From assembly GCF_902459465.1 (NCBI RefSeq), contig NC_047074.1, positions 11,160,001 through 11,224,000 on the forward strand: 64,000 nucleotides of DNA, in the 5' to 3' direction. The translations under genes were made by a program, and so were the position numbers. Each line of letters starts with the position of its first letter. Within the stretch, counting starts at the first letter, position 1. This document shows positions 11,357 to 60,685 of the stretch, one piece after another. This DNA comes from Asterias rubens (lineage: Eukaryota). Below the pieces are notes generated by a model. That model did not search any database. It saw only the letters and a list, made by a program, of their open reading frames with translations, and had not been told where the DNA came from.

Positions 11357-18596
<7,240 letters not shown>

Positions 18597-20966: not shown

Positions 20967-22350
20967 ATGGAAAAACACTGGGTTGAGGACCTGTTCCCTC
21001 CATTCTACACTTACACCTTGGACAAGTCGACAACATCACAAGAAGAAGAAGGGAAAGACAGTCCCAGCTTGAAACCTCATGATGATGAGGAGGAGTACAT
21101 CAAGCGTATTCAGGAAATGTACGACAGAGTTCGCATCGATCTGAATCAGATTGAAAAAGAACGACAACAGAAATGCATCCAGGTGAGGATGAGGTCAACT
21201 GAATGAATTGTTGCGATAATCTTAAATCTACGCCCTCCCTCCATTTTCCCGCTGTCGGGAGGAGGGTTTTGTACAATTATCACAACAACTGAATGAAAAG
21301 AAGCCAGTTGCTTTTCAGAGTTTAGACAATTGAGGAAGGCCCCGCGGGCCGTAATGTGAGGAGGCCCTTTCCACATTCCCAAATAGTGTTTTCAATGACA
21401 AATTACAGGCATGAAATTTCATCTTTAAAAAGGGCAAGGCCATTACAAAGGGCACTTCCATTGAAAAATCTTAAAATCAACGGAAAACTTGTAAAAGGGG
21501 CACCAAGGCCAAGACAAGAGAAACAGAGGCCATGACCTGCGTGCATGGCCTGCATGTAACTCCAGGACTTGTTGGTAACAATCTTCTTCCTTTCTTTACT
21601 ATGTAGGTAGGAGAGCCATTGTCTGAGCATCTTCCACAAAAGTCTCCAATCGTATCTCCTGATAAATCTAAGCTTGGAAGGAAAACGCCAACTAATAAAG
21701 AAGAATGTATCTGGACAGCTGAGGAGCTGGCGTTTCTACGCCAGGCGACTGAGGAGACAAAACAAGAGAAAACACGACTCCAAGCTGAGCTTAGCCTTGC
21801 GATAAAGCAAAGAGAGAAACTTGGACGCAAATGCAAGAGGCAGTCGGAAGCCCTTGCCGTTAAGAACACAGAGCTACTCGAAAAGACCAAGGAAACGGAG
21901 AGGCTATCCCTCCGCTGCCACCATTTAGAGAAAGAGTTAAAGCACTGCAGGATGATTACGAGACTTCAGGAAGAGGATATTGATGAACTTAAAGAGTCCA
22001 AACAAGAGCTCAAGAAGCAGTTCACGGCTTTAAGACATGAGCTCAGTGTCGAGAAGCTGACTGGAGTTAAACTCAAAGGAGAACTGCAACAGGTCGGAAA
22101 GAAGAACGCTTTGGAGACCATCGTCAGGGAGGACGGGATCCGCCTGGACTATGAGCGACAGATTAAGAGTCTCTACGAGGAACTTCAAGGTGCTAAAGAT
22201 GAACTTGATAAGGAGAAAAGAGAAAATACATCAACAAGGAAAGCTTTGGAACACTTGAGAATTCACTTTGCAAATTTCCCTGCTGTTAAGGATCAAAGTG
22301 AACCTCTGGGTAGAGAAAATGATGAACTGGGTCAATTAAACTTGTACTAG
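20967..22350 (+). CDS. CCDC160: Coiled-coil domain-containing protein 160-like, 2 coding exons, 319 aa
   Basis: Exons 20967-21182 and 21607-22350, phase 0. N-terminal KHWVEDLFPPFY and C-terminal YERQIKSLYEELQGAKDELDKEK..RKALEHLRIHFA resemble the conserved CCDC160 ends (KHWKENMFTPFF; YYELEMAKIRGEL..RALELLRKYYA, recalled from memory); heptad-rich middle. Confidence 0.8.
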
Positions 22351-29184: not shown

Positions 29185-32100
29185 TCAGTGGTGGCCGAAG
29201 CCATGGTGATTGTGATGAGAACCGAAGCCATGATGATGACCGTGGTAGCCGTGATGGCCGTAATGGTGATGACCACTCCCCAAGGCTGCCCCGGCTACGA
29301 AGCCTAGACCCGCCAGAGTTGCTGCGTCGTAGCTGCTTTGGTGGCTAGGCTGTCAGATACAAGATATAATGTTTGATTAGTTTGAGGGCCATTTAGAACC
29401 CACAGGGCTTGTATCGATGACCCCTTAGTTGCAAATATACCACAAGTTACCATGTCATATCTGGGCTCAAAATTAACACTTGACCACATGTTCAAGGCCA
29501 GTGGTTTAGCTAATAAGATAGATCTTATAAGAGATGTTAAAGTCATTGGACCCTTTCGGTACAAAAAAAAAATAAAAGTTCACAGATTTACAAATAACTT
29601 ACAGGGTTTACAGAAGGTAATGGTGAAAGACTTCTCTTGAAATATTGTTCCATGAAATGCTTCACTTTTTGAGAAAACATTAAAACAATATAAATTCTCG
29701 TTAGCGAGAACTACAGATTTATTTTAAACACATGTCATGACACGGCGAAACGCGCGGAAACAAGAGTGGGTTTCCCATTATTTTCTCCCGACTCCGATGA
29801 CCGATTGAGCCTAAATTTTCACAGGTTTGTTATTTTATATATAAGTTGTGATACACGAAGTGTGGGACTTAGACAATACTGTTTACTAAAAGTGTTTATA
29901 TAACACCCAAGCAGATCCTTGCCATTTGATTGGAGGATTGTCCGTCACGTGATAGCAAATAAAAGTACCATTGCACGCTGAGTCACTCGCCGTGCTTTTT
30001 CGTTCCATCCGAAAAGTACCATTGCACGCTGGCACGCTGCCAGCGTGCAATGGTACTTTTCGGATGGAACGAAAAAGCTGAGTAAAAACATCACTGCGTG
30101 CGCGTGTCTTTGGTAACGCAGCAGGTGTTACTGCAAGAAAGCATAGTAAAATTACTAGCATTCGGCTTCTACAGTTGAAATTGTTTGTTTTGGAAGTTGT
30201 TTCTTTCAATCAAAATGACAAAGTTCTACTTGGATGTTATATAAAACAAATAATGAATGTTTTTCATTCGTGCAATGGTGCGAATATGTTCATTCGTTGA
30301 AAGCTGGAATGTTCCATTCAACTCGGCTCCGCCTCGTTGAATAGAACATTCCATCTTTCAACTCATGAACATATTCGCACCATTGCACTCATAAACATTC
30401 ATTATGTGTATAATAATGGCTTTAATCTAGATAGATCTTCTTGGCGTTTGTACAACTAACTTTGATTCTGGTCTGGTAAAATCAATTCTTGTCCAGTCAA
30501 AAATGTCTTGTAGACATTTCCCCCAAATTCAAGCCATGTCGTACTATGCTGCTTAATTTTGCTTAGCAGAAAGGTGTTATGCATACTTCTCTGCTTAAGC
30601 AGCAATTGGGCCCTTGCCTTCAACATGGACCAATGTACTAGGAACATAGTTCTTACCGTTGCATTGGGCACATAGACGTTCCTGCCTGGCTGAACGACAG
30701 TCAGATTGGAAACAGGCTGAGCTGGTTGCTGGATATATGTCGGCTGTCCTGGAGCGTACGTGTATGCCTTCAATAAACAAGAAATCCGATACGAGAAAAA
30801 TTATTAAAAAAAATCTTCTTTTTTTCGTGCCAGAATCAATGAATTATTGAACTTAAGTATAAATTCCACAATCTTTCCCTTCTTTCTCATAAGGGTGGGG
30901 AAAAAAACCTAGTAAAATCTGTGTTTCAAAGTTTCCTAAATGTTTAGACAAAATCTTTAAAGACTAACCCTTTCTCGTTGGAACTCTTTCCCTGTTGCAT
31001 AAAGCTCCAGGCCTTTTAGTCTTTTAATGCTTGAGTGAGAAATTACCTCTTTCTCAAAAACTATGCTACATACTGCTAACAATGATCTTGAGTAATTACC
31101 AATAGTGACCAGTGCCTTTAAAGCAAATATGAAGCTTACCCCTGGAGAGCTGTATGACATTGCGGACACAGCTTGTGCCTGAGTTAGGTAAGCTGGAGCT
31201 GAGCTGTAGATGGGTGGTGGTTGCTGGTAGCGATACTGTGCTGGGGACGGGGCTAAACTGACATGACTGGCATACGGAGCTGAACGATAATAAGAATAAG
31301 AATAGAAATAATAATGAAAATAATTCACAATAATAATAAAACGTTCTTATATGGCGCACTTCAAGACCAAAGGAGCTCTGAACGGCTTAACGAGAGAGCA
31401 GATTGAGTAGTCTGTTGGGAACTGCTCTCAAATAAGCAGGTTTTCAGATTCAGTCACTTCTTAGGAGAGCATTCCATAGCTTAGGGCCTCCACACGATCT
31501 TTACCCATAGCCCAAATCCATGCATTTATCAGGTATCAATCAATCAGTTTATTTCCAAAGTATCAAAATCACTATCAAAATCAAATCAAAGGCAATGTAA
31601 GTTGGAAGTTAAGTTGCTTGATAAGATTAATCAAATGAATAATAAGCATGGACTTAAGCGAAACTGTGGAGGAACCCATAAAGAAGCAAAGCTTGTAAGG
31701 TTATGGTTCCCTGAGCAAGCTTGTGCAGGGTATGCAACTGCAGTTTAGAAAAAAACACAGTTGGATGATATTAAGCGGTCATGCAGAAGGAGGGTTAACT
31801 TACATTGTGACGAGTAGGCTGGAGTTTGGGATGGGTGCTGATACAGAGCCGGATTGAATCCTATAGGAGGAGGCTGGGCAGGAATGGCAGGATTGGGTTG
31901 TCCACCATAACCTGTCAGCGCAAAAAAAAGAAAATACACATGTATTGTGTATACAAAATACAACACTTAGACCCTTACGGGAGACTGACATTATGACCAC
32001 GGTTCAATTTCATATAGAGTTGCTTAAAGGAACACGTTGCCTTGGATCAGTCGAGTTGGTCTTTGAGCGTTCTATAACGGTTTGTAAAAAAATGCATATA

Positions 32101-32466
32101 GGTAGAAAGATATTTTAAAAGTAGAATACAATGATCCACACAAATATGCTTGAAATTGCGTGGTTTTCTTTTTATCTCGTCGACTAGCACGCTCGGCCAT
32201 TTATGGGAGTAAATTATTTGACTCCCATGAATGGCTCCCATTGATTGCTTAGAATAGTAGAGTCCAAATTACCATTTTTGCACTACTTGGTTAACCCTAT
32301 TTCTACCTCCATGGATAAACGTGCTACCACGACTACTACAAGTTCCCTTGATGAGTGACAATCTAAACAAACAAACAAGCGCCTTCAGTCTGCTCAAGGT
32401 CATACCTGGAGGTGCACCATTGGGCCTCCCAGCCGAGTAGGCTTGCGGAGGGTAGTTCGGATTCAT
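29185..32466 (-). CDS. Unnamed 194-aa Pro/Gln/Tyr-rich protein with a Gly/Ala hydrophobic segment and His/Gly-rich C-terminal tail; 5 coding exons
   Basis: Exons 32466-32406, 31911-31804, 31279-31140, 30767-30657, 29349-29185; GT-AG, phases 1,1,0,0 (585 nt). Last exon PSHQSSYDAATLAGLGFVAGAALGSGHHHYGHHGYHGHHHGFGSHHNHHGFGHH* is under 60 aa and absent from the ORF track. An acceptor just upstream of 32473 implies an upstream 5' exon. Confidence 0.85.
29885..30420. mobile_element. Unclassified double-hairpin element in intron 4 of the His-tail gene; a related left end occurs at ~54730
   Basis: Perfect 41-bp-arm palindrome at 29994-30078, imperfect ~65-bp-arm palindrome at 30250-30405, and shared cagatccttg(c/t)catttgattgg block. 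Confidence 0.55.
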
Positions 32467-32535
32467 GATTTCTCTATAAAAACAAAACAAGAAACAAGTT
32501 TGTTGTTTATATTTAGTTGTTAGAAATCATGTTAA

Positions 32536-32915
32536 AGGCAGATGACACTATTGGTAATTACTCAAAATAATTATCATCATAAAACCTTTCTTGGTGACGA
32601 GTAATGGGGAGAGGTTGACGGTACAAAACATTGTGAGAAACGGCTCCCTGTGAAGTGACATAGTTTTTGAGAAAGAAGTAATTTTCCACGAATTTGATTT
32701 CGAGACCTCAAGTTTAGAATTTGAGGTCTCGAAATCAAGCATCTGAAAGCACACAACTTCGTGTGACAAGGGTGTATTTTATTTCATTCATATCTCGCAA
32801 CTTCGACAACCTATTGAGCTGAAATTTTCACAGGTTTGTTATTTTATGCATACATGTTTAGATACAACAAGTGAGAAGACCGATCTTTGACAATTACCAA
32901 TAGTGTTTACTGTCT
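32536..32915. mobile_element. TTAA-flanked MITE family K1 (Kolobok-like)
   Basis: ttaa|aggcagatgacactattgg ... ccaatagtgtttactgtct|ttaa. Confidence 0.8.
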
Positions 32916-33273
32916 TTAATTAAAAAAAAAATCAAGGTATTTACACACAAATGTATAGCGCTCTAACCAAGGAAAGTACCACAGCGCTTTACACAGTACA
33001 CACAATTAAACAACAAGAAAAGAAAAAAACAGAATAAGCCAACAAATCAATTGAACAAGTGGGTTTTTAGAGATTTCTTGAAGACTGCTAGCTAACGATC
33101 TCAGCAAAAACTAAATATTTTTTGTAAATAATATAGCCCAGTTGTTTGTCAGAAAAAAATGTTCCGGCAGCCATTTTCCATTTAAACAAATTTAAAAAAG
33201 AAAAGAAAAAAAAGCCCCTTCATTCCTCGTTTGTTTGTTTGTTTAAATTGTTTTGTCCAATTTGTTTAATTAA

Positions 33274-33620
33274 AGGCATTGTACACGTTTGGTAATTGTC
33301 AAAATAACAAGCCTGTGGAAATTTGGGCTCAATTGGTCATCGAATTTGCGAAAAAATGATGAAAAGAAAACACCATTGTTGGACGAAATTGTGTGCTTTC
33401 AGATAGGAAGTCTTCTAGCTAGAAGCTAATATTTTAGTGAGAAATTACCTCTTTCTCAAAAACTACGTTACTTCAGAGTCAGAGACAGAGGGAGTCGTTT
33501 CCCACAACAATGTTTTATACCAACATTTATAACAACAACCACAGGTCTCCAATGCTCGTGACCAAGTCAGTTTTTCAGTTAATAATTGTTTTGAGTTATT
33601 ACCAAACGTGTACCTTCCCT
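33274..33620. mobile_element. TTAA-flanked MITE, K1-related subfamily
   Basis: ttaa|aggcattgtacacgtttgg ... ccaaacgtgtaccttccct|ttaa. Confidence 0.7.
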
Positions 33621-34299
33621 TTAATTTATTGTGTGTTTGAAAAGTAGAAAAACAACAAATACATAGCAAAGTACACTGTGTTAAGGGTTTGTATAGGATT
33701 TCAGCCTACAGCTACACAACACCAACAAGAGTTCAAGAAGTCAACAAATCCATCATAATAATTCATAGCATAGTCATTATTTTCTCATTTCTGTACTACA
33801 AAATTAAAATACAAACTAGAATTCGTAAGTCTGTAGCCGAGATTAAGTAGTTAACATTTTAAAACCCAATCGCACAAATATAATCAAATAGCCGTATTCT
33901 TTATCTATAAACCACGAACGTTATCTGCGTTTTTTACATTTTCTAGATAATTCTGAGTTTGACATTTTGTGACGGCATTCCCCATCGTTTGACATTGTGA
34001 CTCGTTTTTGACATTAAATTATTTTGAAGCAGAGCTTTTTTTCAGTGGGATCGTTGACGAATCTGTAATAAAATCAAGCCAATCTGCTTTGGGTCAACAC
34101 TATCTATATGGAGATCTAAACTGAATCATTTTGTATATTACGAACCTTGGCTTTCGAAATCAGGTATTTTCAGGTCACATTTGCTGCTCTGCACTTCAAA
34201 GATTTCAGAATTTGTTGTGTAGAAAAGGCGAATCGCTAGCGTCTTCAGTTTCGAAAGGGCGCCCTCAGTTGCCGAATGTCAATTCGATTTGTTTTGTCG

Positions 34300-36073
34300 T
34301 TTTTGTTGTTGTTGTGACTCATTGATAAAACAAAAGAAGAAAAACTTACCACAAAAAGCTAAAACCGTAAACAAACAAACCTTCAAAATAAACAATCAAG
34401 CAAAGATAAAAAGGCGACAATTAATACACTTATGAATATTTAGTTAAACTTGAGCATGAGAAAAACGATGAACAGAACTATTTCTACCTCCATGATGGAA
34501 CCAAAACAAAGCAAATTAAGCCGACAAAACAAATCGAATTCGAATTGACATTCAAAAACATTTATTTAAAAGTGTATAATTGGGTTTGAACCATGGCGGT
34601 GGTCTGATCCCCATATAATGATGCGTAGTTGTGTGTGGGGATGGGGTCCCTGTCATCACAGAAGCCATTAAATTATAACTGTTAACCGCATCTGGACGTG
34701 TATTTTTTTCTCAACTTTTTTTTTGTAAAGCTTCTGTTTTGTAAATCATTGATTTGGAGAGATGCTATTGTCAGATTTTTGGCCCCAAACATTAAAAATA
34801 GAATTTTTTAAGTGAATGGTATTTCAAAGAGTACCCGCTCTAACGGAAAAAGTTTAACTTTTACTTTTGATGGTCAGGAACCATGACAAAAATTTAAAAC
34901 GCTTCTTTTAAAACACATAAGAATTGGTCACGTGATATAATTATTGTCGGGATCCCGACAAAAACACTGAGCACTTTCGACGAGCAATGGCTCGCAATGG
35001 CTCAAATGAAAGCTTGTAACTTTCTCGACCCTCATCAAAATACCTATTGAATTTTAAATCAAAATTTTTGGGTCAAATCGGCCAAAAATCTGACATAGCA
35101 TCTTTAAAATGTATAATTTGTTTCGCGGCCATTTGCTAAGACCATGGAGGTAGAATTTTACCTCCATGCTATAGACTAAGAGGACACAAGGGGGGCTCGC
35201 GGACTCGAAAAAAATTATTATTCACTCCTCCACCATGCATGGGCAGATTGAGAAGTCTTAGCTAATTAAGTATTATGATTTTAAATTGTCACAACTATAA
35301 CCTTATTCCCTCAACCATGCCTCAACAATGTTCCCCGCTTGATTTTTTACAAACAGAATCACTACTCGGCCAATTCCCCACTTCTTTGATACGATACGAA
35401 AGATGACATTGACGACGTCACCATTTACATGACGTAATGGTTTATTTATAGACTTATCCCGTGATAGTGGCTTTTTATTGGCCCTTTTCGAAACGCTGTA
35501 TTTCTATTGTGGGCTTCAGCTTAGACTAATGTGCCCGCTTGAATCCCGTACCGCAAGCACGTACTTAACAAAGCGAAAGCCAGAGTCGAAGCTGGTGCAC
35601 TAAGGTGGGAGCCGCAGTTTTAAAAAGGCCTACATGTACCAGCATGCACGTCGGGTTTTCGGGCGTTCGGCGGATCGGCAAAACAATGTTTTGTTATGTT
35701 ATTGGTCATACCCATCGATGTAAATTCATACACAGTTTCGTTTTATGATTTGCAGTCTAGTAGAACTGAGTAAAAAACGAGTTGTGGAACCGGGAAGTTG
35801 GTTTGAAATAAAGGCTAAAAAAAAAAGTAACAGTAGACATACTTGCAAGATCGGCCACAAATAAACTACGGTAAGTGTGTTCTTTGTTGTTCATTTTCAT
35901 GGAATTATTGAATTGAATGACATTCATTGATAATCAAATTGATTGATTGAGTCGTATGGTGAATGTTTTGCCCATTTTCCGGACATTGTGTTTTACATTC
36001 ATTAATCATACACCATACTGGCATAAAACATTGAGTTTCGTTGAACTGCTTTTAACAGGTTGAGAAGTGAGCA
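34300..36073. promoter_or_regulatory. Putative shared divergent promoter region of the His-tail gene and the PH-domain gene
   Basis: CpG-richer block ~35340-35800 with bZIP-like cores (gacgtcac, atgacgtaat); plus-strand donor cg|gtaagt after 35870 and acceptor aacag ending at 36058 define a non-coding first exon of the PH gene. Confidence 0.45.
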
Positions 36074-39000
36074 ATGGCGAGTTTAGAAGTGACAAGATCT
36101 CACGGTATCGCTAAAGCATCATGGATGCAAAGACAGAGTGAGTTTTTAAAGTTATTTTTTGGACATCGTAATTTTAAAATTGCATTTGTTTAATATAATA
36201 TTTGAATTGAATTTAACTATATTGTTATTTATTATATGATATCATTTAAGAGTTCACTACGGGACTATCTTACTTTTATGGAGTCATGACCTGTTAGTGT
36301 TAACCTTTAGTGTCATATATTTTAACTTAACCACAAACTGTTCCGTTGTATTTGTTGTAGTTGCCGAATTGTTAAAACTATAAAGTTATTAATTTAAAAA
36401 CTGGTAAAAAACTACTTAAAAATGTAAATCAGAACCTCATCCTTTTTTCCACTGTATCCTTTTTTATTTTCTTGTTTTAAAATTATTAAAAAAGACAAAA
36501 TGTTTCATGTTTTATCGCCGCCTCATCTTGGCAGAATTTTGATGTAATTTACATATTGTAGACTTATTTGTTCGTAGTCAGAATGGTCAACATTTTTGTT
36601 TCTGCCATATGTCATGTATTGTTCTTCTCAATACCCAAGGAAGACAATGTAAAAATCATCTTGAATTTATGATTTTTCCATTTCCTATCTCTTCAAGTTT
36701 GTCAAAATGTTATATTTACAGGCGTGACAGGCCACAGATTTCAGCTGTAATAAACTGATGAGAAAATAGCTTTACTTGCAACAAACTTAACTAAAATTAT
36801 GATGAAAATACTCACAGTTTTTTTTTTTCAACTCCGAATTCAGGTGACATTTTGAGCCGATGGAAGTATTCCTTTTGTGTTTTGTACCGGAACGGAAAGT
36901 TCAACTTCTACAAGGATGAAAAGATGACTTCTGAACAAGGATCTATCAACATCCCCAAGAGCTGTTATGCAGTCAATGTAAGCAAGGGGCTGCACATGGC
37001 GCAGTGGGTTTTAGAGCAGGCTTGATATTTCACGGAGGTAACGAAGGCGATCGCCTCTGTGACACCTGGTCATTGCCTTGGTGCCCTTGAATTGATCTAG
37101 AAGAAATTTGCTACCCTTGCCCTTACGTGCCTGTTAAGCATCAAATTCAAGTTCTGGTGGCAAAGTCAAAGGGGTGTTGGTTCAAATACCAGTCATGACA
37201 CTTGTTTCCTTGAGCAAGACACTTACAATGTAACTGTGAATGCTTCTCTTCGCCCAGGGTAAATGGGTACCTGTGAGGGCAGAAATGATTTGTGTGATTG
37301 ATTTAGCTTAGTGTGCTACAATGTACGTACTTGGCACTACAGGCTGTATACTGCCAAGGCAGCTGAGATGGTTGATGGAATGAAACAAATGACCTAGAAG
37401 TGATCAGGGGTAATAATGTGTCTGAGCGCCAAAATTCGGTTTTACAAAATGGCAGACCGTTTTTGTTGACAAAGTAAAAGAAAAACACACAATTTTGGCC
37501 GATAATTTTATTTTTTTATCGTGTTCTTATTATTCTGTTACAACCAGGCTGGTTTGGAAATCTCAGGATCGCCTACACCCCCGACCGGTAGAGACAAGCA
37601 TTGCCTTCTGGAGCTCAGATCCCATGAGATCAATATTCTGTTCTGCACAGACTCGGTCGATGACAGCGTCTCATGGAAGTCTTCAATTCTGGAGGTCAAA
37701 AACTCACTGGTAAGTTTCCTGTCTTTGATTTTGTGACAATTTTGTTAAAGTTTTGGAGATGTTTTCCCTCTTGAATTGTTACAATGCTCCATGAATTTTG
37801 CGAAAGTAGGTAAACTGCCGAGGAAAAGGAGGAGTCAGGTTTGCAACAATCCTGTCCACAGGTGTGATGTTATTTCAATGCAAGTCATGCCTACTTCACA
37901 AACATAGGTATGCTTCGTTTTTTGAAAGGGCAAGGGCACCCAGGCATTTTCATAATAAAGGGCACCCTATGAGGAAAATGTAAAGATGGCTACTGTCACG
38001 GCATTTCAAGGGCCCAATGGCATTGACCAAGGGGGCATGGAGGCGATCGCCTTCATTGCCTCTGTGAAGTATCGGGCCTGTATAAGGCTGTAACCCCCCC
38101 CCCCCCCCCCCTCCCCCCATTAAGTGCCCATAGTCATTGGTCGGTACAACCTAAACTAAAATAATTTTAAACATGATACATGATAAATAGAAGAATAGCA
38201 ATAATTTCAAATCTCTTGCCTTTTTTCCCCATTCAGACACAACCAGCTCAGCCTCCTGCTGCTGCACAACCCTCCTACATGATGGCCCCGCCCCCTTATT
38301 CCGCCACCCAGGCTCCAGTGCAGCAGGTAATGCTACCCCCAGTACAGCAGGTTGTGGCACCCCCTGTCCAGCATGTTCAGGTTAACCCATATGGGGGTTG
38401 CACAACCACCTACACAACTTACCAGGCACCCAACACACAGTACGTGGTTCCCCCGACCAATCAGACGGTGATCGTCAATGGGCGTACTTGCCACCAGAGA
38501 AGGACAACCTACCCGGTGCAGAACACAGTTTACACCTACCCTGGCCAAACGGTCTACACATACCAAGCCGGACAAAACAGTAAGTGCCTTAAATGAGACT
38601 TCTAAGATGTTTAGGGTTTAATAATATGTAATACTTTTTTTCCTTATATACATGTAGCGCTTTTTCACATCCTTGTTGGGGTGTATCAAGGCACTCAGTA
38701 TTTTGTCATGCAAGGTATGTGGGCCTACGATTTATAAGTATAAGAGCTATTCCTTTAAAGCACCATGTAATGGTTGGTAATGTGCTGTGGCGCAATATGA
38801 TGCCAGTCAAAACCAAAAAGACCAGGGCAAACCCCTTCTCTTTTCAATAAGTGCATCAGGGTTCTTTCAAGTGTGTTACACAGCACACAGGACCAACGGC
38901 TATACGTCCCATGGTAAAGTGTCTTGATTAAGAGCACAGGTTTCACGGCTAGGACTCAAAAAACCCACACTCTGCTGATCAGAAACACCAGTGAGTCCAG

Positions 39001-39104
39001 TACTCTTATCCACTTAGCCCTGACACGCCACGTATTAATGAATAATGTGTTCATTTGTCCATTTTTTCTCTTTATCTGTGTTTGCAGTTGTGACTCGCTA
39101 CTAA
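36074..39104 (+). CDS. PLEKHB2: PLEKHB/evectin-like PH-domain protein, 5 coding exons, 239 aa, no C-terminal membrane anchor
   Basis: Exons 36074-36137, 36844-36977, 37548-37709, 38237-38579, 39088-39104; phases 1,0,0,1 (720 nt). WMQRQSDILSRWKYSF..CLLEL..LFCTDSVDDSVSWK aligns with the evectin PH domain, followed by a P/Q/Y-rich region with PPPY. The 17-nt last exon (IVTRY*) is the least certain part. Confidence 0.8.
37150..37430 (+). mobile_element. tRNA-derived SINE with central block (ttccttgagcaagacactt..gggtaaatgggtacctg)
   Basis: B-box-like ggttcaaatacc followed by the central block shared with the other SINE copies. Confidence 0.6.
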
Positions 39105-42100
39105 TGCAACAAGCATCCCGTCTCATCTGGTCATGATTCTACTGTTTGTGAGGCAAGCTGAAAAATTATAATTTGTGCCAATTCGCTTTGGGAGCTAAGA
39201 GGGAAATAAATTGTAAATAGACTTAAACAAATTTAAAGCTTCTAATTTTAAAGTTTAACGATTGTTTGTAATGGCCTGCAAGTAGGCCTATAGAATATTT
39301 CCCGAGCTGTTTCAAACAGATGTTTCGATAAGTGCATAGCCACAATCGTGGGTAAACTGTTTGGTACAAAGACACCAAATGAACAGTGTATAAATGTTGA
39401 GTAATTTCTTTTGCTGATGTCGTATTGAACAAACTCAAGCACTTTTTGTGTATCATTGACACAGCAATTGTTAATTGCGATATAATAACAAATATTGACA
39501 TAATCAGTGGTTTCACCAAGCTCTTGTTCATAAAACAGTCACGAACAAAATGTATATTCATGATTGTGGCTGTGCACATACGTGTAGAATGTAAAAAGAA
39601 TTATATAATTAATTTATATTTCAGGGTGATTTGGTTCACCACCAGCTGATTATAGATGCCCGCTCGATTTATTGTATGGTCGTGACCTCGTGATACTTCT
39701 TAAAGACACTGGACACTATTGGTAAATGTCAAAGACCAGTCTCCTCACTTGGTGTATCTCAACATATGCATAAAATAACAAACCTGTGAAAATTAGAGCT
39801 TGATTGGTCGTCGGAGTTCCGAGATAACTATGAAAGAAAAAAACACCCTTGTCACTGGAAGTTGTGTGCTTTCAGATGCTTGATTTCGAGACCTCAAATT
39901 CTAAACTTGAGGTCTCGCAATCAAATTCGTGGAAAATTACTTCTTTCTCGAAAACTACGTCGCTTCGGAGGGAGCCGTTTCTCACAATGTTGTATACCAT
40001 CAACCTCTCCCCATTACTCGTCACCAAGAAAGGTTTTATGCACATAATAAACCTTAAGAATGAAAAAAATAGACAATGTAAATAATACTGCAGGAGCTTC
40101 TGTCATACCCATACCTAATAGAGGTCCACATGAAGTGTGCACACTGAGTTGACCACTGACCAGCAACTTGCGCAGTGGCGTACTCACCCGAACGACTCGT
40201 TTGGAAGTCTAGTCAACCGTCTGTATGGTATTCAACACCTCATTGCTTCCGCCTTTTACCGATAGTGTCACTGGTTCCCTTCTGTGCTTTACACATGTTA
40301 GCATGTTAACCATGGTCCTGAGGCTGGTTCCAAATGGTCGACCACAGTAGTCAACCAATGGTTGACCAGCATGCGTTCGAGTCAAAAATGTGAAAACCTT
40401 TAGTTAACCATGGAGCACACTCAAAATTCCTTGTGGCTTATACTAGTAGTACTAGCTCAAAGCCATTATTAATTAAGGATACAGCCATTTTCTTTATTAA
40501 AATTTTTTTAAATTATAAATGTGTCAATGCAGAGGGCTACAATCGAAAAGGCAATCAGTGTTGGGGCACTCTGACCTAAAGCCTTTCTGGCATTTTTTTT
40601 AAGAACACAATCCTATGATGCAAGAAGTATTGCTTTCAATATGCTCTAATTATTATGAATTTATTTTTCGGGGTAATCAGAATATATCGAACTGTATTTT
40701 AATTGGAATTGTACAATCATGGTGTTGTTGTGTTGTTGATGTTCACTAATAATTCCCAAAGTAATGTATGTTTTTTTCGTAAAATTTGTTGTAAATTAGA
40801 ATCGTTTAAAGTGAAATTCAGCATGTACTATACGCAAATACTCTAAGAAAATACAGAGTGCTTCAGATTTAAAGGTTATTTATGATAAATTTGTTAACTT
40901 ATAGTTTTACATTTCTTGAAAAAATGGAATTAGCTGACAGTGCTCACCCGACTAAAATTTGAGAACAGATCGACAAACAGGGGCATGTGTGCGTGTAAGT
41001 CAACTCAACGCAACCACATTACATGTTCTTTGAAACATTAATTCGTTTTGGTAGTTTACACACATAAAACAAATATTCTCAATTAATGCATCCATGGGGA
41101 GCATTTTTTGTTTTGTTCTTTTCTTTGTCTTTGCACCTTTTAACTGTTAAAACAGTATCCCATAGACTCTGCACAGAAAAATGTCGCCGTGAAGCTCCCC
41201 ATATCCCCTTGGTCTCGACAGGGTACCGAAAAAGAGCACACCATGCCAGCGGAACCTGCACACATGAGCCGAGAAACTAGACTTAGATTAAGCACATAAT
41301 ATAGCTCTGCTGGATTGCAGCAATATTTATGCTTTAAAAAAATTAGGCGATTACTGTGCATTTCATTATGTCTTGTGGACGCAATTTTTTTTTTTTAATT
41401 TGTATCTTTTGTTTTGTAAGAATTTTTCACATTTGCTTGCTTGCTTGCTTGCTTGCTTGTAGTATTTGAGAAAAAGTACAGCAGAATGTACACAATATTA
41501 AAAAAAGGATTTTAAAATTCCTACCATTAACCGTTTCTTTCAAGTACCTTTTGTTTTGTTTATAAATATAAGACATTTGATATGAACTGAATTTTGCCAA
41601 CAAGTATTCACAAGTGAATCAACTTCTTTTGTGTAGAAGAGAGAAGCGAGAGAGAAAAAAAACAACAATTTCGCAGATTATAAAGCCGGTGTAAAATTTC
41701 ACACTTTTTAATGGTAACGTTGTCAGTGGACTATGTTGTGAATTAAACACACCTGTCTTGGCAGTACTTGCTCATTTACAAAAATACAAACCACACACCA
41801 AACTTTTCCTCCTGCATGGACTTGAAAGAAGGAGGAAATAAATAAATCAACAAATTGCAGCACCAAAAGGACAGATTCATTGGTATACTACAAGAGTTGT
41901 ATTTTCTAGTCTTTATTAAAAATTAAAACAAGTATCAAAGTAAAGGTATAATTTATGATGGCTATGTAAAATATAGTACTACGTACATCATAAAGTCATA
42001 AAAGTGTAAACAATATTATAATGCGTAAAATGACTATTACTGAAATAACAACTTTTCTTTATAAAAAAATAAGCCTATTTGTAACGTTTCTATTGGCCAT

Positions 42101-43454: not shown

Positions 43455-43760
43455 CTAGTACCAAACTGATGCGCAGTCCAGCTGAGTAACAGAAACAACA
43501 TCTATGTAGGCCTACCTGAATTTGTCTAGTACCAAATGATGCGACGACCAGCCGAGTCACAGAAAAATACTATAATAGGAATTTATATAGTAACAAAATG
43601 ATGCACAGCCTAGCCGAGCAACGTAAACAACATCTACCTGAATTTTGTCTAGTTTGCGATGCGCAGACCATCGGATTATTAACAGCATACTATACCTGTA
43701 TTCAGAATTTGTCTAGCACCAAAATGATGCGCAGCCAAGCCGAGTCACAGCAACTACCAT
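43455..43760 (-). repeat. Degenerate 61-71-bp tandem repeat (5 units) whose first unit is the laccase C-terminus and stop codon
   Basis: Plus-strand units start ctag/atag..aaaatgatgc..agccgagtcacag at 43455, 43526, 43587, 43649 and 43713. Confidence 0.85.
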
Positions 43761-46700
43761 ACATGAGTTCAGCGCCATAAACACATAAGACATGGAACTA
43801 GTAGACCGTAAGGCACTGCAAGGCATCTGGGATGGTGGGGGCTTGTCAGTTTCATTGCCATGTGGGTACCAGTTACCACAACGTGGGAAATCCTTCGGTT
43901 TGGGAGGTAGGTCTTGGTCCTTGCCGACATGCAACACAATCGCCATTCCTACCTGTAGGTTTTCAGAACAACAAATATTGCGCATTAAAGGCAGTGGACA
44001 CTGTTGGTAATTACTCAAAATAATTATTGGCATAAAACCTTACTTGGTGACGAGTAATGGGGAGAGGTTGATGGTATAAAACATTGTGAGAAACGGCTCC
44101 CTCTGAAGTGCCATAGTTTTAGAGAAAGACGTAATTTTCCACGAATTTGATTTCGAGACCTCAGATTTAGAACTTGAGGTCTCGAAATCAACTATCTAAA
44201 CGCACACAACTTCGTGTGACAATGGTGTGTTTTTCTTTCATTCATCTCGCAAGTTCGATGACCGATTGAGCTCAAATTTTCACAGGTTTGTTATTTTATG
44301 CTTATGTTGAGATACACCAACTGTGAAGGCTAGTCTTTGACAATTACCAATAGTGTCCATTGCCTTTAAACACAAGGATACGTTTATTGTTTAAAGACAA
44401 GTATCTCACTATCCAAACATGTGCAAAAAAGCAACGAATCTTATAAGAAAATTTGAGCTAGTTGTTAATCTCTTGATCTGCTGAGATCTTGAATATGGAG
44501 CTTTTAACAGCTTTATTCCACGTACTGCATCTTTGGAACTCCTTGCCTGGTGCACGTTTCTCTCCATCATACAATTTTAGACTGTTTTAGGAGGAACATC
44601 AGCATTCCTACCTCCAGCTCCCCTGAGTTCTTTCCACTTTGAATACGTTTTCCTCTTGTAGCCCCACACCAATGGGTTACTTTGAGCCTTATTTGAGGCG
44701 AACTTGCATACAAAAGTACAGTATGAATAAGGCAATTAATCAATTGGACACTATTGGTAATTCACTCAAAATAATTATAAGCATAAAAGCTTACTTGGTA
44801 ACGAGTAATGGGGAGCTTGAATAATAGTATAACACATTGTGAGAAACGGCTCCCTCTGACGTAATGTAACTTTCGAGAAAGGATTAACTTTCCTCGAATT
44901 TGATATCGAGACATCAGATTTAGAATTTTGAGGTCTCGAAATCAAGCACCTGAAAGCACACTATTTCGTGTGACAAGGTTTTTTCTTTTATTATGAACTC
45001 GCAACTACGTCGACATTTTTCACAGGTTTGTTATTGTATGCATATACGTTGAGATACACCAAGTGAGAAGACTGGTCTTTGACAATTACCAACAGTGTCC
45101 AGTGTTTTTAACTAACTCTTCGATACTACTTACGTCACTATGAAACTGTAGATGACAGTGGAATAGCCACCAGCCAGGATTATCGGCAGCGAAGCGGACG
45201 ACTGTGTAACCCCCATCCGGAATTATCACGGTATCCTTACGGGGTGCTTTCACGAAATTTCTATTGATGCCTCCTATAAACAAAATAACATATACATTTT
45301 TTGATTGATTTAGACCCTTTATAGTCTTAAAGTTTTGCGGTCAGAATAGAACCAGAGCTGTGCCGAAGGGAGCCGAATCATCTGACGTACTCGGAGCTCC
45401 GGATTACCAAACACGGTAGTATTACGTCATGCCATGCCTGCGCACACCAAGCGAAAGTAGTCGATTTTAGTGTCGTGCCGAGTCGACCGACTGTTTTGCT
45501 CTACTCCTAGCTCTCATGGCGGCGTCCACAAGAAAATCGTGTGGTGAACGAGTGGAGTGTCTACGACAGTATTGCGAAAGTATTTGAGGAAATGAAATTT
45601 CAAAGAGGGTTCTTCTGAAAGCCAGAACAGAAGATCGAGGGTTTGGGGTTGCCCATCGAAAAAGCACTCGTACGATAACAAAACAACGTCTCGAAGATTT
45701 ATTCGCGGCGGAGGGGGAGGAATCGTATAGCAGAGCACCGGAGACTCACGCCCGCAACAACAGCATGCGACGTCATCCCGGAGAGCTTGGCACGCCAGAG
45801 AGCTGAGACCGTGATTACTGCGTGCCGAAATGCCCGGTGACGTCACCCGCAGCTCTGAGTAGGCCGCGACACCGGCATGTGTGCCGCTGACACCCGTTAA
45901 GGTGTGTACAAAACACTCATGTGTCGTACCACTCTCGTAGTTGTTTCCTGTTTCAGTTTGTCTTGAATTTTCAATAGATTTTGCCGTCCCCATTAACACC
46001 TTAACATCTCTGTGTAGGCATCCCCCTGCTTCTCGATCCTACACACTGGTTACCCAACTGATGGCAAACATGTCATCAGGAACAAGGGGCATGGCACCTC
46101 TCTGGCAGTGCCCTCTTTCAGCAGAATGACACATTCCATCTATTTTTAGCCTGAGTTCGGGCGGTGTGCCCTTGGCCCACGTGAGCTGTCCGCACACGCC
46201 CTAACGATGAGAACACTGATAACAACATACTCGGAACAGGAACAACACAGTACAAAATGGCGCTACATCATCATCGTTTGGGTGGAAGATGAACAGCGAT
46301 CCTACGTGTTCTTGAGCATCAAAGAACATACCGTCCATACTTGCTAGACTTGTGGACAAGTCGTTAATCTGCCGCGGTGAGATGGTTGAGTTGTGGCGGT
46401 GCTCTCGCGAGATCACTACTCTCGCGCGAACTGATGATTTCCGACCTCCCCTCTTCATTAAATGGGACCGTAGTCGTGAGAGCAGTAGTCTCGCGGGGCC
46501 AGCAGTCTCGCGAGAATACCGCGGGAATCGCGGGAAGATTCGGAATATAGTCGGAACGCTATCACCGCGACAGACATTTAACGACTTGTCACAAGTCTAC
46601 ATACCTGCCTGGTCGAGTCTTTTCACTTCCTCAACGGTGGTCGAATCTCCTATCTTTCCCATTGCAACCACCTGGAAGCTGTATCCGTGAAGGTGCATGG

Positions 46701-49700
46701 GGTGACTGCCCTCAAACGGTATACCTTCATCAACTAGGACCAACTCGACCACCTGTATACATATACAATATGGATACCTAGGGTAAAATATTGTAACTGC
46801 TTCTATACATAAGATTACACGCCATGACATTTAGACGTATTTCACGTTAAAACGTATATCTGACAGCTAATCGATTTACAAATCGCTCAAGTTTAAAAAA
46901 AAAACTCACTTCTCCGAGGTCGACCTCCAAATAGTGAGTACACTCACAGTACGCCTCCTTGCAATGGTCTCTCTTTGCCTCCGTAGATTCGAAGCTGCAA
47001 AGCTCAAACTCCGGGATGTCAGCAAGCTGGGTCAAAGGTGGTGACCCCGGGGGTACAAAGGCCACGAAGTTGAGCTGTGACGTGTACACAAAATGACCAG
47101 GTTTCAGCCCGACGGGATAGTAGTCTGGGTGGTTGTAGTTAGGGTTGGTAATGTTTCCAAAATCCATCGCGATGTAGAAGGTTCTGTCGTTGTTCTCTAA
47201 AGACTCCGCCTGCTTTTCTATAGAAACAGACAGAGGAGGAACATCCGGGTGATTCAAGACGGATTGCACAGCATCCTTTTTGGATTTTGTTACAAAGAAA
47301 CTACATTAAATAATTATCTTAGCTTTTGGTCAATGTCCTCTTTAGAATTGCTCTAGTGTCCGCCAATGTGCGCGGCTTTTCTGATCTTGCGTACCCTACC
47401 GACGGTGGTGGTGAGAACCTTATCAATATTTTGAAAAAAACCTTTAAATTTTTTTTCACATATTAAAGTTTGTGGACGGTAACAGTGTGTTAGAAATAAA
47501 ACCCCGTGCAACCAAAACTTTTGACTCCAAAATTGTTTGTTTTATAAGGTGCGTAACTATCAAAACACACAGAAAACACAAAACGAAACAAAAACAACAA
47601 CAGAATTCCCCTCACCTATTGCGGTCAGCTGATCAACAGTCATGACAGTTTCCGAAGCTGGTAGATTAAACGGATTGAGAAGTATCCCTTCCGGGGCTAT
47701 CCCTGGATAATCCTCTGATGCCAGATCCTCTTCTCCTTCAACATTGTTGTAAACCACCATCGCTAGTCCCTGGACCCCACTGCAGAGACCTAATCCCTTG
47801 AACCTCATCCAGTATCTACCAACGGCCCTGTCAGCAGTCAGAACGAAGTCGAACCTCTCCCCACCGTAGATAACGTAACGCGCCACCTGGACGGGCTCGA
47901 ATGGAGACCCATCGCTGGCAATCACAGTCAGGTTGTGCTTGTCCAATGAGACCTCTATGGGACAATCTAAGATGGCGTTGCTGATAGTCCGGAAGCGATA
48001 CCTCTTACCGAGATCCACGTGAAAGACTTCCCTAGGAGTTTTGTAAGTCTGGTTTGAGTCACTCATGGTATACTCGATAGACTGCCCTCTGCCGTTCACC
48101 AGAATGGAATCCGGAGAACCACTGAGGGTGGAAAGGTGGTGCCCTGCGAACCGGTTTACGGTAACCTCGTGAAACCAGTCGTGGACGACCACCACGTGTT
48201 CCGGAAGATCGTAATCGTAAAGCCCGCTGTGCGGATCATCAGGAGCGGCTTGCTTAATGATCAGAGGTCCGAAGACTCCGTCGGATCGCTGCATACCTGT
48301 GTGAGAATGCCACCAGTGCGTTCCGGGGGTGTCCGCCAGGAACTCGTAGGTGAAGCTGGAGCGAGTTGGGATGTTGCACTGTGTGACCTGAGAGGTGCCG
48401 TCCATGTATGGTGTACCGCGTTGGTGAAGGCCGTGCCAGTGTATGGTAACGCCCTCAGCGTTCACCAAGTAGTTGTTGACCTGCACAGATAGTTGGTCGT
48501 GTTCACAAACCTAAAAAGAAGTATATTTTGTAACGAGAGTTTATTATAAAAATTTGAAGGTTCAAACATGTAGCAGAATGGTCAGAGACAACTACGCTTC
48601 CAACATCTTAGTCATGTTCCTTGTTTCCAGTAACAGTGAGGAATGCTATTATTCATTGTACAAACAAAGAACCAGACTACTTGACCTATCAACCTCATTT
48701 TGATTGTACGTTATGAGATATTAAGACGGCCGCCCCATGATCAATGTCTATAGTCTATCGTTCGGTAAAACGTAACGTAAAACATAACGCAAAACGTAAC
48801 GTTAAACGAAACGTAATGTAAAACGTAACGTAAAACGTAAGTCTGTAGCAGAATTAGTCCGAAAGTTGTCAACCACCACCTGAAGACTAAGTCCAGAGAC
48901 AACGCAAAATACCACTCGGTAAGTGCGGTATAGGGTCAGCTTGACCCAGGAGTTTTAGACTCTTACCAAGTAACGTTTTTGTGGCAAAATTTTGTTGTTG
49001 TAATCTGCACTATTTTCTAAGGGGGGGGGAAAATGTAAAACTCCAACCTGAATACTCGGTCCTGGGAACTGCTTGTTGACAACGGCTACAGCTCTAGGAG
49101 CCCCGTCCAGAGCCAAGCAATGTGGCCGGTAACAATCAGTCACATTGAAGGGACACTTGAAGCACGCCTTGGACATGCTGTAAGACCACTCAACGGTGAA
49201 CTCATAGCGGCAGGTCCGGGGCTTCGATGGCCAATCACAAGGTCGCATGCAGTGGTGTTCTACATCAGACTGGCTCAGTCCTTCATGTTAACAATAACAA
49301 ATAAAAACACGTTTTTACAAAATGGTTCAAGGAATACCAGTATACCTAATCAATACAGGATAATTTATGTTAAAAATACCCTTAAACCCAAAATAACTTT
49401 AAAAGGTGAGTGACCCTAAACACTATGTATGAACGAACTATCATATAGGTAATTCACTTACATGTGATCAATTTACCGATTCTGAAGCCAACACTTCTCA
49501 GGAAAGCTGCTAACTGTTTAACTACACCAGCACCCCGCCCCCCCAAAAAAAAAAAAAAAAACTATCGCGAAAAAGGCATTGGACACATTTGGTAATTGTC
49601 CAAGACCAGTATTCACTTTGAACCAACTGGTCATCAGAGTCGCAATAGAATAATGCAAACAAAAAACAAACACACTATTGTTGCACACAATTGGATGTGC

Positions 49701-60470: not shown

Positions 60471-60685
60471 CCCGCGCGCACCACGTCTATAGTGCGTCCG
60501 TAGTACGGGAAGACTTGCGTGACGTCTAAAGAACGGAATTGCTCTATTAACAACCCCCTGTCCTGCCATCTAATAAAGGTACGCAATATTACGTTATGTG
60601 TGCCTCAATGACACCTGTCGTTCTGTTGTTAGTGCACTGGTACTCTCACTCCTTGACTACTGCAACTGCCTTCTCACGGACTTAA

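What the first reader, a model, noticed from the sequence alone, without database searches (positions are those of the whole stretch)
29185..39104. Head-to-head pair that looks like a split evectin (PLEKHB): PH half and anchor half
Evectins have an N-terminal PH domain, a PPxY-containing middle and a C-terminal Gly-rich hydrophobic anchor. The plus gene has PH and PPPY but no anchor. The divergent minus gene has no PH but has PPIY and DAATLAGLGFVAGAALGS, which aligns without gaps to the human evectin-2 anchor as I recall it (DLALGMLAGAATGMALGS, 8/18 identical). PH-gene exon 4 ends in phase 1 and minus-gene exon 2 starts in phase 1, so the blocks would fuse in frame if collinear. Possible explanations are inverted duplication with complementary loss, a co-regulated two-subunit version of evectin, trans-splicing, or a local inversion or misassembly.
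Basis: partly seen in the sequence, partly recalled or inferred. Interest (0 to 1): 0.75.

Follow-up and report, generated by a model that had tools for sequence, protein, structure and literature searches.

The report
Anchor-less starfish evectin beside anchor-bearing orphan gene
In the starfish Asterias rubens the evectin (PLEKHB) gene has lost its membrane tail, and the small starfish-only gene next to it ends in a segment nearly identical to that lost tail; the two are separate, normally spliced genes, not one broken or mis-assembled gene.

Summary
The window is Asterias rubens. The plus gene (ATG 36074, stop 39104) is the 239-aa PLEKHB2-like protein. It has a PLEKHB-type PH domain and a PPPY motif but no hydrophobic tail. 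Spliced RNA contigs from four runs join 38579 only to 39088, so no anchor exon was missed. The minus gene (32466-29185) is the annotated 194-aa "extensin-like" protein. It is Pro/Tyr-rich, has PPIY, a Gly-zipper hydrophobic segment and a 52% His tail.

New here:
- Five asteroid PLEKHB proteins and one brittle-star isoform all stop 5-9 codons into the last exon, which in a chiton and two metagenome-derived PLEKHBs continues into the anchor.
- The neighbour's segment matches those anchors: GFVAGAALG is 9/9 identical to the chiton, and 12/19 to the others.
- A PLEKHB last-exon HMM picks this exon alone out of the window's six-frame ORFs (E 0.002, next best 3.3). None of 400 composition-preserving shuffles reached the hhalign score.

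Against the split reading:
- The Pro/Tyr-rich regions are not significantly similar, and intron positions differ.
- An exhaustive profile search finds the neighbour only in asteroids and finds no PLEKHB.
- The head-to-head pairing occurs in Asterias (two assemblies) but not in Acanthaster or Patiria.

Misassembly is excluded and trans-splicing finds no support. Descent of the tail from PLEKHB is probable (about 0.55). A two-subunit evectin is unsupported.

The parts
35640..35869 (+). PLEKHB2-like gene, non-coding first exon (5' end is at or upstream of 35640)
   Evidence: Spliced RNA contig and the joint 35869>36058 (GT..AG) in four runs
36058..36137 (+). PLEKHB2-like exon with the ATG at 36074; start of the PH domain; ends in phase 1
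   Evidence: Joints; translation
36844..36977 (+). PH-domain exon; holds the RWK motif whose Lys aligns with evectin-2 Lys20
   Evidence: alignment to PDB 2dhi; Lys20 requirement from PMC8740049
37548..37709 (+). PH-domain exon (C-terminal half of the domain)
38237..38579 (+). Pro/Tyr-rich exon with PPPY (38288-38299) and the family-invariant YP.Q...Y.YPGQ..Y block; ends in phase 1
39088..39762 (+). Last exon: five codons (IVTRY), stop at 39102-39104, then 3' UTR. It is orthologous to the start of the anchor-coding last exon of chiton PLEKHB2 but is truncated
   Evidence: The only joint from 38579 goes to 39088, in four runs. No anchor relic in any frame downstream. Alignment
32467..35639 (.). 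Region between the two coding starts. It contains a ~390-bp interspersed repeat (32532-32919). No RNA depth at 35201-35600. The minus gene's 5' UTR exon must lie in here but was not mapped
   Evidence: acceptor site just upstream of the minus-gene ATG
32406..32466 (-). 'Extensin-like' gene, first coding exon (ATG at 32466); ends in phase 1
31804..31911 (-). 'Extensin-like' coding exon 2, Pro-rich (phase 1 to 1)
31140..31279 (-). 'Extensin-like' coding exon 3 with PPIY (31217-31206)
30657..30767 (-). 'Extensin-like' coding exon 4: the most conserved block (QPTYI..QPVSNLTVVQP.R.VYV.N)
   Evidence: Invariant among A. rubens, A. planci and an ENA fragment
29185..29349 (-). 'Extensin-like' last coding exon: evectin-type hydrophobic Gly-zipper segment (29328-29275), 29-residue His/Gly tail with 15 His (29274-29188), stop at 29187-29185
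   Evidence: PLEKHB last-exon HMM E 0.0019. The exon plus 3' UTR is fully held by RNA runs X1 and X2

Best explanation
These are two separate, intact, transcribed genes.

(1) The single starfish PLEKHB (evectin) orthologue keeps the phosphatidylserine-type PH domain, including the Lys aligned with evectin-2 Lys20, and the PPPY motif. In sea stars, and in at least one brittle-star isoform, a stop codon 5-9 codons into the last exon removes the tail anchor. By inference it works as a peripheral membrane adaptor: held on membranes by its PH domain alone and presenting PPPY to Nedd4-family WW-domain ligases.

(2) Its head-to-head neighbour is a small gene found only in asteroids. It has a disordered Pro/Tyr-rich N-terminal part with one PPxY, a 17-residue Gly-zipper hydrophobic segment, and a His-rich tail.
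- The hydrophobic segment is most probably homologous to the PLEKHB anchor, acquired by an old partial duplication or capture of the anchor-coding end of PLEKHB.
- By inference the protein is a PH-less, membrane-embedded PY-motif adaptor. If its topology matches evectin's, its His tail would face the lumen or the outside of the cell.

The adjacency is real in the genus Asterias but is not conserved in other sea stars. Nothing indicates that the two products are joined or must act together.
For: Gene models:
- Exact match to the NCBI 194-aa protein, and a 239-aa annotated neighbour.
- Splice joints in four RNA assemblies, with 38579>39088 as the only exit from the Pro-rich exon.
- The minus gene's last exon is held 1.00 in RNA runs X1 and X2.
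- dN/dS against A. amurensis is 0.24 (PLEKHB) and 0.32 (neighbour), on few substitutions.

PLEKHB identity:
- PDB best hits are the PLEKHB2 and PLEKHB1 PH domains at about 1e-15; the next hit is at 9e-4.

Anchor loss:
- Four asteroid cluster representatives (P0004-P0007), the A. rubens protein itself and brittle-star isoform X2 all end without it.
- The chiton protein continues ..QTTIVYTDNDYRRR.. into ..GFVAGAALGTMMW...
- The last intron is phase 1 in the starfish, the chiton and L011.
- There is no anchor relic downstream in four asteroid loci.

Anchor affinity of the neighbour:
- 9/9 identity to the chiton; YD..A..G.VAGAALGS is 12/19 identical to L011 and L015.
- hhalign probability 76-83%, E 1e-5 to 2e-5.
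- 0 of 400 segment-preserving shuffles reach the score: observed 34, maximum 25.
- A three-sequence PLEKHB last-exon HMM gives E 0.0019 over 2,872 window ORFs; the next best is 3.3.
- The nearest of 7.7 million Atlas clusters to the C-terminal part of both the A. rubens and A. planci proteins is 'PLEKHB2 (Fragment)' (a lead only).

Not an assembly artefact:
- Collinear at 83-95% identity with A. amurensis from 28.6 to 47.5 kb.

Functional inference:
- Evectin-2 PPPY binds and activates Itch, WWP1 and WWP2 (PMC5665887).
- The evectin PH domain alone localises to recycling endosomes, and evectins are type IV tail-anchored (PMC8740049).
Against: - The similarity is carried almost entirely by about 11-19 residues: hhalign score 34 of 37.5 comes from the anchor.
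- The Pro/Tyr-rich regions are not significantly alike (z about 1.4).
- At whole-database scale no PLEKHB reached E 1e-3 with the neighbour's profile. Scaled from the window to the whole genome, the HMM E-value would no longer be significant.
- Exon structures differ. The PLEKHB Pro-rich half is one exon followed by a phase-1 intron; the neighbour has four introns with phases 1, 1, 0, 0.
- The neighbour's hydrophobic stretch is shorter than PLEKHB anchors (17 versus about 22 residues). It is sub-threshold by Kyte-Doolittle (1.18 over 19 residues) and is not at the extreme C-terminus.
- The PPxY is not positionally conserved between A. rubens and A. planci.
- No membrane, ligase or metal-binding data exist for either protein.
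Confidence: 0.55

Rival explanations
1. Unrelated orphan with a convergent tail. The 'extensin-like' gene would be a lineage-specific Pro/Tyr-rich small membrane protein in the general style of CYSTM-, LITAF- or DAZAP2-like low-complexity proteins. Its Gly-zipper segment would resemble the PLEKHB anchor through selection for the same small-xxx-small helix packing. Its position next to PLEKHB in Asterias would be a rearrangement coincidence.
For: - No significant similarity outside the anchor.
- Different intron positions and phases.
- No PLEKHB hit in the exhaustive profile search.
- The pair is unlinked in Acanthaster and Patiria, while the neighbour keeps its own downstream gene.
- The Atlas look-alikes also include CYSTM, FAM168A, DAZAP2 and plant Gly-rich proteins at similar scores, all below 0.9.
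Against: - An exact 9-mer plus the flanking YD..A pattern shared with PLEKHB anchors of other phyla.
- No shuffle of the same composition approaches the score.
- No Pfam Gly-zipper family matches either tail, so this is not a generic motif.
- Convergence would have to combine with an a priori roughly 1-in-10,000 adjacency to the one gene that has lost exactly this segment.
Confidence: 0.3
2. Two-subunit evectin. After duplication and complementary loss the two products would still work together: the anchored PY-protein would tether or partner the soluble PH/PPPY protein on endosomal membranes, and the head-to-head arrangement would provide co-regulation.
For: - Complementary architectures.
- Both messages are present in the same RNA libraries X1 and X2.
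- Head-to-head orientation with 3.6 kb between the start codons and at most about 3.2 kb between the transcript starts.
Against: - The pairing is not conserved in Acanthaster or Patiria, so no constraint on linkage across asteroids.
- The intergenic distance nearly doubles in A. amurensis.
- There is no RNA signal at 35201-35600, so no tight shared promoter is shown.
- The evectin PH domain alone suffices for endosomal localisation in mammals (PMC8740049), so an anchor partner is not needed.
- There is no interaction motif or interaction data.
Confidence: 0.1
3. Artefact. A single evectin gene would be split by a local inversion or misassembly, or rejoined at the RNA level by trans-splicing.
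For: Only the complementary content of the two genes and the matching phase 1 at two exon borders.
Against: - The same order and orientation in the independent A. amurensis chromosome assembly.
- Each gene has its own ATG, stop and UTR.
- The neighbour exists as a stand-alone five-exon gene on another scaffold in A. planci.
- Anchor-less PLEKHB proteins are annotated in four asteroid species (A. amurensis, A. rubens, A. planci, P. miniata), and a fifth asteroid-like sequence (P0005/L009, unnamed) ends the same way.
- RNA contigs from four runs show only the 38579>39088 joint and no loose end there among those listed.
Confidence: 0.02

Closest known systems
Evectin-2 / PLEKHB2 and evectin-1 / PLEKHB1 (vertebrates), and invertebrate PLEKHB2-like proteins such as that of the chiton Liolophura sinensis
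   Same: Plus gene:
- PH domain closest to PLEKHB1 and PLEKHB2, with the Lys20-equivalent kept.
- PPPY just after the PH domain, followed by a Pro/Tyr-rich region with the YP.Q...Y.YPGQ..Y block.
- Last intron in phase 1 at the same place.

Minus gene:
- PPxY, a Pro/Tyr-rich region, and the G(F/M)VAGAALG(S/T) anchor core.
   Different: - The plus gene stops before the anchor.
- The minus gene has no PH domain, a shorter hydrophobic stretch lacking the MMW..L.W end, a 29-33-residue His-rich extension, and four introns where PLEKHB has none.
Membrane-bound PY-motif adaptors of Nedd4-family ligases (Ndfip1/2 type; from general knowledge)
   Same: A small membrane protein whose cytosolic part offers PPxY to WW domains. 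This is the mechanism I infer for the minus gene.
   Different: No sequence relation. Ndfip proteins have three transmembrane helices and several PY motifs. Binding by the starfish protein is untested.
CYSTM and similar Pro/Tyr-rich tail-anchored microproteins
   Same: A short protein with a low-complexity Pro/Tyr/Gln N-terminal part and a C-terminal hydrophobic segment. They appear among the Atlas feature look-alikes.
   Different: No Cys-rich transmembrane segment and no Pfam CYSTM match.
Plant extensins (the name NCBI gave the minus gene)
   Same: Only a high proline content.
   Different: No signal peptide and no Ser-Pro4 repeats; the gene is from an animal. The name is a compositional artefact of automatic annotation (sequence).

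Membership tests
PLEKHB / evectin (plus gene) | N-terminal PH domain of the PLEKHB type | tested here: met
   Pfam PH E 3e-7. The best solved structures are the PLEKHB2 and PLEKHB1 PH domains at 1e-15 to 4e-15; the next family is at 9e-4.
PLEKHB / evectin (plus gene) | Lys equivalent to evectin-2 Lys20 (needed for phosphatidylserine binding) and the Ile15/Leu16 positions | tested here: met
   RQSD(I/V)LSRWK aligns with RQSTILKRWK. The requirement is stated in PMC8740049. Lipid binding itself was not tested.
PLEKHB / evectin (plus gene) | PPxY motif after the PH domain | tested here: met
   APPPY at residues 137-141, invariant in the four asteroid cluster representatives of alignment A1 (P0004-P0007). 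Its role in evectin-2 is described in PMC5665887.
PLEKHB / evectin (plus gene) | C-terminal hydrophobic tail anchor (type IV topology) | tested here: not met
   The protein ends ..GQNIVTRY. There is no hydrophobic stretch, no alternative exon in RNA and no anchor-like ORF on the plus strand of the window.
PLEKHB / evectin (minus gene) | PH domain | tested here: not met
   No Pfam domain. No PH relic near the gene in A. rubens or A. planci.
PLEKHB / evectin (minus gene) | Anchor sequence of the PLEKHB type | tested here: met
   9/9 identity to the chiton and 12/19 to L011/L015. HMM E 0.0019 in the window. hhalign E about 1e-5 with 0/400 shuffles reaching the score. The similarity is short and is significant only at local scale.
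PLEKHB / evectin (minus gene) | Anchor at the extreme C-terminus and long enough to span a bilayer | tested here: not met
   17 uncharged residues followed by a 29-residue His/Gly tail. Kyte-Doolittle 1.18 over 19 residues, against an anchor of about 22 residues in the chiton.
PLEKHB / evectin (minus gene) | Family-level sequence similarity at database scale | tested here: not met
   A profile of the neighbour searched against 1.84 billion representatives found only asteroid sequences and one spurious Sushi-repeat protein at E <= 1e-3.
Extensin (the name NCBI gave the minus gene) | Signal peptide and Ser-Pro4 repeats of plant cell-wall glycoproteins | tested here: not met
   The sequence starts MNPNYPPQ and has no SPPPP repeat.
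Generic Gly-zipper membrane domains (Pfam) | Match to a Pfam Gly-zipper model | tested here: not met
   No such family at E <= 10 for the tails of P0001, P0002 or P0010.

The most novel reading that the evidence does not exclude
A natural fission of a bilaterian tail-anchored adaptor. In the sea-star lineage evectin would have been duplicated in inverted orientation and the copies lost complementary halves. One copy became a soluble PH + PPPY lipid reader. The other became a PH-less, PPxY-bearing membrane stub that gained a His-rich, possibly metal- or pH-sensing, luminal tail. Asterias would still preserve the original head-to-head arrangement, and the two products might still cooperate on endosomes.
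Probability: 0.3. Interest if true: 0.55.

Novelty: new variant of a known kind. Interest (0 to 1): 0.4.

Why it matters
Evectins are defined as PH-domain proteins held on post-Golgi and recycling-endosome membranes by a tail anchor. Sea stars, and probably brittle stars, show that the family can work without the anchor. This fits the mammalian finding that the PH domain alone reaches recycling endosomes, and it offers a natural test of what the anchor adds.

The neighbour is a cheap experimental handle. It is a 194-residue protein that carries the evectin anchor core without the PH domain, plus an unusual His-rich tail. If the tail's descent from PLEKHB is confirmed, the pair would be a clean animal example of duplication followed by complementary domain loss.

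Neither gene is newly discovered, since both are in NCBI annotation. The function proposed for each is inferred, not shown.

Tried and rejected
- BLASTP of the two proteins against each other in A. rubens/amurensis and in A. planci: nothing below E 0.8.
- Smith-Waterman with shuffles on the Pro/Tyr-rich parts alone: z 0.8-1.4, not significant.
- Exhaustive HMM search with the neighbour's profile: no relatives outside asteroids and no PLEKHB; one spurious Sushi-repeat hit.
- Metagenome scan with the neighbour's profile: 53 pattern matches, none confirmed.
- Search for PH-exon relics near the neighbour, and for DNA similarity between the two loci: only shared interspersed repeats.
- Search for an anchor relic after the stop codon, or elsewhere downstream, in four asteroid PLEKHB loci: none.
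- Pfam on the tails: no Gly-zipper or other family.
- Fetching the brittle-star locus and a 39.6-kb ENA asteroid contig for outgroup synteny: the first is not on record, the second has no DNA served.
- The original evectin paper (Krappa 1999) is not held. The human or rat anchor could therefore not be taken from a tool, and I did not use the recalled human sequence as evidence.
It is a 1-in-3 coincidence and involves the neighbour's N-terminal exon, not its anchor exon.
Full report
**What is there.** The window is Asterias rubens. The minus-strand model I built from splice sites is 100% identical over 194 residues to NCBI 'extensin-like [Asterias rubens]'. In the same assembly that gene has a 239-residue PH-domain gene head-to-head beside it.

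The plus gene translates to 239 residues from exons 36074-36137, 36844-36977, 37548-37709, 38237-38579 and 39088-39104. It has a Pfam PH domain and PPPY at 38288. The minus gene (32466-29185, five coding exons) has PPIY at 31217 and the peptide DAATLAGLGFVAGAALGS from 29328. A 29-residue tail with 15 histidines follows. A scan of all six frames found no other Gly/Ala-rich hydrophobic 18-mer in the 64 kb.

**The plus gene is a real evectin-family member and truly has no anchor.** Against all solved structures its best matches are the PH domains of PLEKHB2 and PLEKHB1 (1e-15 to 4e-15). The next family scores 9e-4. In that alignment the motif RWK lines up with evectin-2 R18-W19-K20. Lys20 is required for phosphatidylserine binding (PMC8740049).

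Spliced contigs from four RNA assemblies give one transcript: a non-coding exon ending at 35869, then the joints 36137>36844, 36977>37548, 37709>38237 and 38579>39088, and a last exon running to about 39762. No other listed joint or loose end leaves 38579.

Orthologues named PLEKHB2-like in A. amurensis, Acanthaster planci and Patiria miniata, a further asteroid-like sequence, and isoform X2 of the brittle star Amphiura filiformis all end without a hydrophobic segment.

**What was lost.** The chiton Liolophura sinensis has a 230-residue PLEKHB2-like protein that does carry the anchor..PGPQTTIVYTDNDYRRRHGLNGDMATGFVAGAALGTMMWTPMLFW. A metagenome scan with the family alignment returned 22 loci. 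Two of them (L011, L015) contain a last exon ending ..QTTV(V/I)YAD..RRYYDGTDVAMGMVAGAALGSMMWGPLLWW.

The starfish proteins end ..PSQTTVVYRR..SQSTTILYR or ..GQN(I/L)VTRY. These endings align with the first residues of that exon. The preceding intron is in phase 1 in the starfish, the chiton and L011. Asterozoan PLEKHB is thus truncated 5-9 codons into the ancestral anchor exon. No relic of the anchor remains after the stop in four asteroid loci. Two cDNA-like metagenome contigs (L007, L008) encode PLEKHB-like proteins whose C-termini lack the Gly-zipper, so the tail is labile in other lineages too.

**Does the minus gene's tail resemble PLEKHB anchors more than chance?** Yes, but only locally.
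- The core GFVAGAALG is identical in the chiton. YDAATLAGLGFVAGAALGS matches YDGTDVA-MGMVAGAALGS of L011/L015 at 12 of 19 positions.
- hhalign of the neighbour's alignment gave 76% probability and E 2.4e-5 against the chiton protein. Against the PLEKHB family alignment it gave 83% and E 9.7e-6.
- Almost all of that score comes from the anchor: 34 of 37.5.
- I shuffled the Pro/Tyr region, the linker and the anchor of the chiton protein separately, which keeps composition and layout. None of 400 shuffles reached the score (mean 13.9, maximum 25.4).
- An HMM built from the three tool-derived PLEKHB last exons was searched against all 2,872 six-frame ORFs of the window. It found the neighbour's last exon at E 0.0019, with the next ORF at 3.3.
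- As a lead only: the protein-language-model Atlas placed the cluster 'PLEKHB2 (Fragment)' nearest to the C-terminal part of both the A. rubens and A. planci proteins, out of 7.7 million clusters, at scores of 0.80 and 0.82.
- No Pfam Gly-zipper model matches any of these tails.

**What argues against a simple 'split evectin'.**
- Outside the anchor the two proteins are not significantly alike. BLASTP E values are 0.8 or worse, and shuffle z scores are 0.8-1.4.
- The exhaustive profile search of 1.84 billion representatives with the neighbour's alignment recovered only the A. rubens and A. planci proteins, an ENA fragment and a spurious Sushi-repeat protein. No PLEKHB reached E 1e-3. The HMM E-value would not survive scaling to the whole genome.
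- The exon structures differ. The Pro-rich half of PLEKHB is a single exon in both starfish and chiton. The neighbour has four introns with phases 1, 1, 0, 0. In the hhalign register its last intron lies about 7 nt from the PLEKHB one and in another phase.
- There is no PH relic upstream of the neighbour and no DNA similarity between the loci beyond interspersed repeats.
- The hydrophobic stretch is only 17 residues, against about 22 in the chiton. It is followed by the His tail instead of ending the protein.
- The brittle-star isoform already lacks the anchor, yet no extensin-like gene was detected outside asteroids. That timing does not fit a single asteroid-stage duplication with complementary loss, unless the brittle-star gene was lost or escaped detection.

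**Linkage.** A. amurensis has the same head-to-head pair. Its locus is collinear with the window from 28.6 to 47.5 kb at 83-95% identity, with about 2.7 kb extra between the genes. That excludes misassembly or a private inversion.

In Acanthaster planci and Patiria miniata, PLEKHB lies between a class-I tRNA-synthetase gene and a 309-316-residue gene. The A. planci extensin-like gene is on another scaffold. It keeps the same convergent downstream neighbour as in the window, at 21.6-22.3 kb. The pairing is therefore specific to the Asterias lineage or was broken in valvatids. I could not polarise this, because the brittle-star locus and a 39.6-kb asteroid contig were not retrievable.

**Are both genes functional?** Both are present in the same RNA assemblies. 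Against A. amurensis, dN/dS is 0.24 for PLEKHB and 0.32 for the neighbour, on few substitutions. Between A. rubens and A. planci the neighbour keeps several blocks: the N-terminus, QPPPIGFNP.LY, APAY.TQA, the block QPTYI..QPVSNLTVVQP.R.VYV.N, AGLGF.AGAAL and HHGFGHH repeats. The PPxY motif sits at different positions in the two species.

**Most likely mechanism (inferred, not shown).**
- The starfish PLEKHB would act as a peripheral adaptor. Its PH domain would bind acidic lipid, and its PPPY would recruit and activate Nedd4-family ligases. This follows evectin-2, where PPPY binds Itch, WWP1 and WWP2 (PMC5665887) and the PH domain alone reaches recycling endosomes (PMC8740049).
- The neighbour would act as a PH-less, membrane-embedded PY-motif protein. 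With evectin-like type IV topology its His-rich tail would be luminal or extracellular.
- I put the homology of its hydrophobic segment with the PLEKHB anchor at about 0.55 and convergence at about 0.3. Functional cooperation of the two products is about 0.1 and is not exclusive of homology. An artefact or trans-splicing is about 0.02.

**Novelty.** Both genes are already annotated, and the name 'extensin-like' is a compositional artefact. I found no paper linking PLEKHB2 with echinoderms. Three points appear to be undescribed: anchor loss in asterozoan evectins, an evectin-type anchor core in an asteroid-only gene, and their adjacency in Asterias. I rate this a new variant of a known kind, of moderate interest.

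**Limits.**
- Only three anchor-bearing PLEKHB tails were available.
- The host organisms of the metagenome contigs are unknown.
The neighbour's own splice joints and 5' exon therefore rest on the NCBI model, its conservation in A. planci and A. amurensis, and word content in RNA runs.

Noticed in passing
window 32532-32919, 39700-40048, 13195-13512, 43985-44369, 51458-51794, 54201-54568, 60682-61067, 63171-63421: A ~390-bp interspersed repeat family in both orientations, also present in A. amurensis. RNA-assembly word depth there is enormous (up to about 2.5 million at 39.6-40.0 kb), so it is a very abundant, transcribed SINE-like element. One copy lies between the two genes and one in the PLEKHB 3' UTR region.
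   Followed up: partly
window 21607-22347 (+): Exon(s) of a coiled-coil gene (weak ATG16 Pfam hit in the A. planci orthologue), 58% identical over 250 residues to the gene convergent with the extensin-like gene in A. planci. This side of the synteny is conserved between Forcipulatida and Valvatida.
   Followed up: partly
window about 43500-47500 (-), by collinearity with L004 17731-22934: A multicopper-oxidase gene (three Cu-oxidase Pfam domains in the A. amurensis product) lies downstream of PLEKHB in Asterias. In Acanthaster and Patiria the downstream gene is instead a 309-316-residue protein without Pfam domains.
   Followed up: no
L007 94-735 and L008 1-663 (JGI metagenome contigs, cDNA-like): Two intronless PLEKHB-like open reading frames of unknown host. 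Their C-termini end ..GGPMFYGPLWW and ..GTGVYPFFW, without the Gly-zipper core. The evectin tail therefore seems to have been remodelled independently in other lineages.
   Followed up: no
window 38086-38124: A long poly-C tract in the intron before the Pro-rich exon. The reads tool skipped it as a repeat.
   Followed up: no
window 29274-29188 (-); P0002 residues 151-183: The His/Gly tail is built of HHGFGHH-like units (15 of 29 residues are His in A. rubens; longer and ending in Cys in A. planci). Metal or pH sensing is an obvious but untested idea.
   Followed up: partly
P0006 and P0007 C-terminal regions (..PGQTCMYTCQPSQ..): Valvatid PLEKHB proteins carry two conserved Cys near the truncated C-terminus; Asterias has Cys at other places. 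Lipid modification as a substitute anchor is conceivable but was not examined.
   Followed up: no
   Followed up: no
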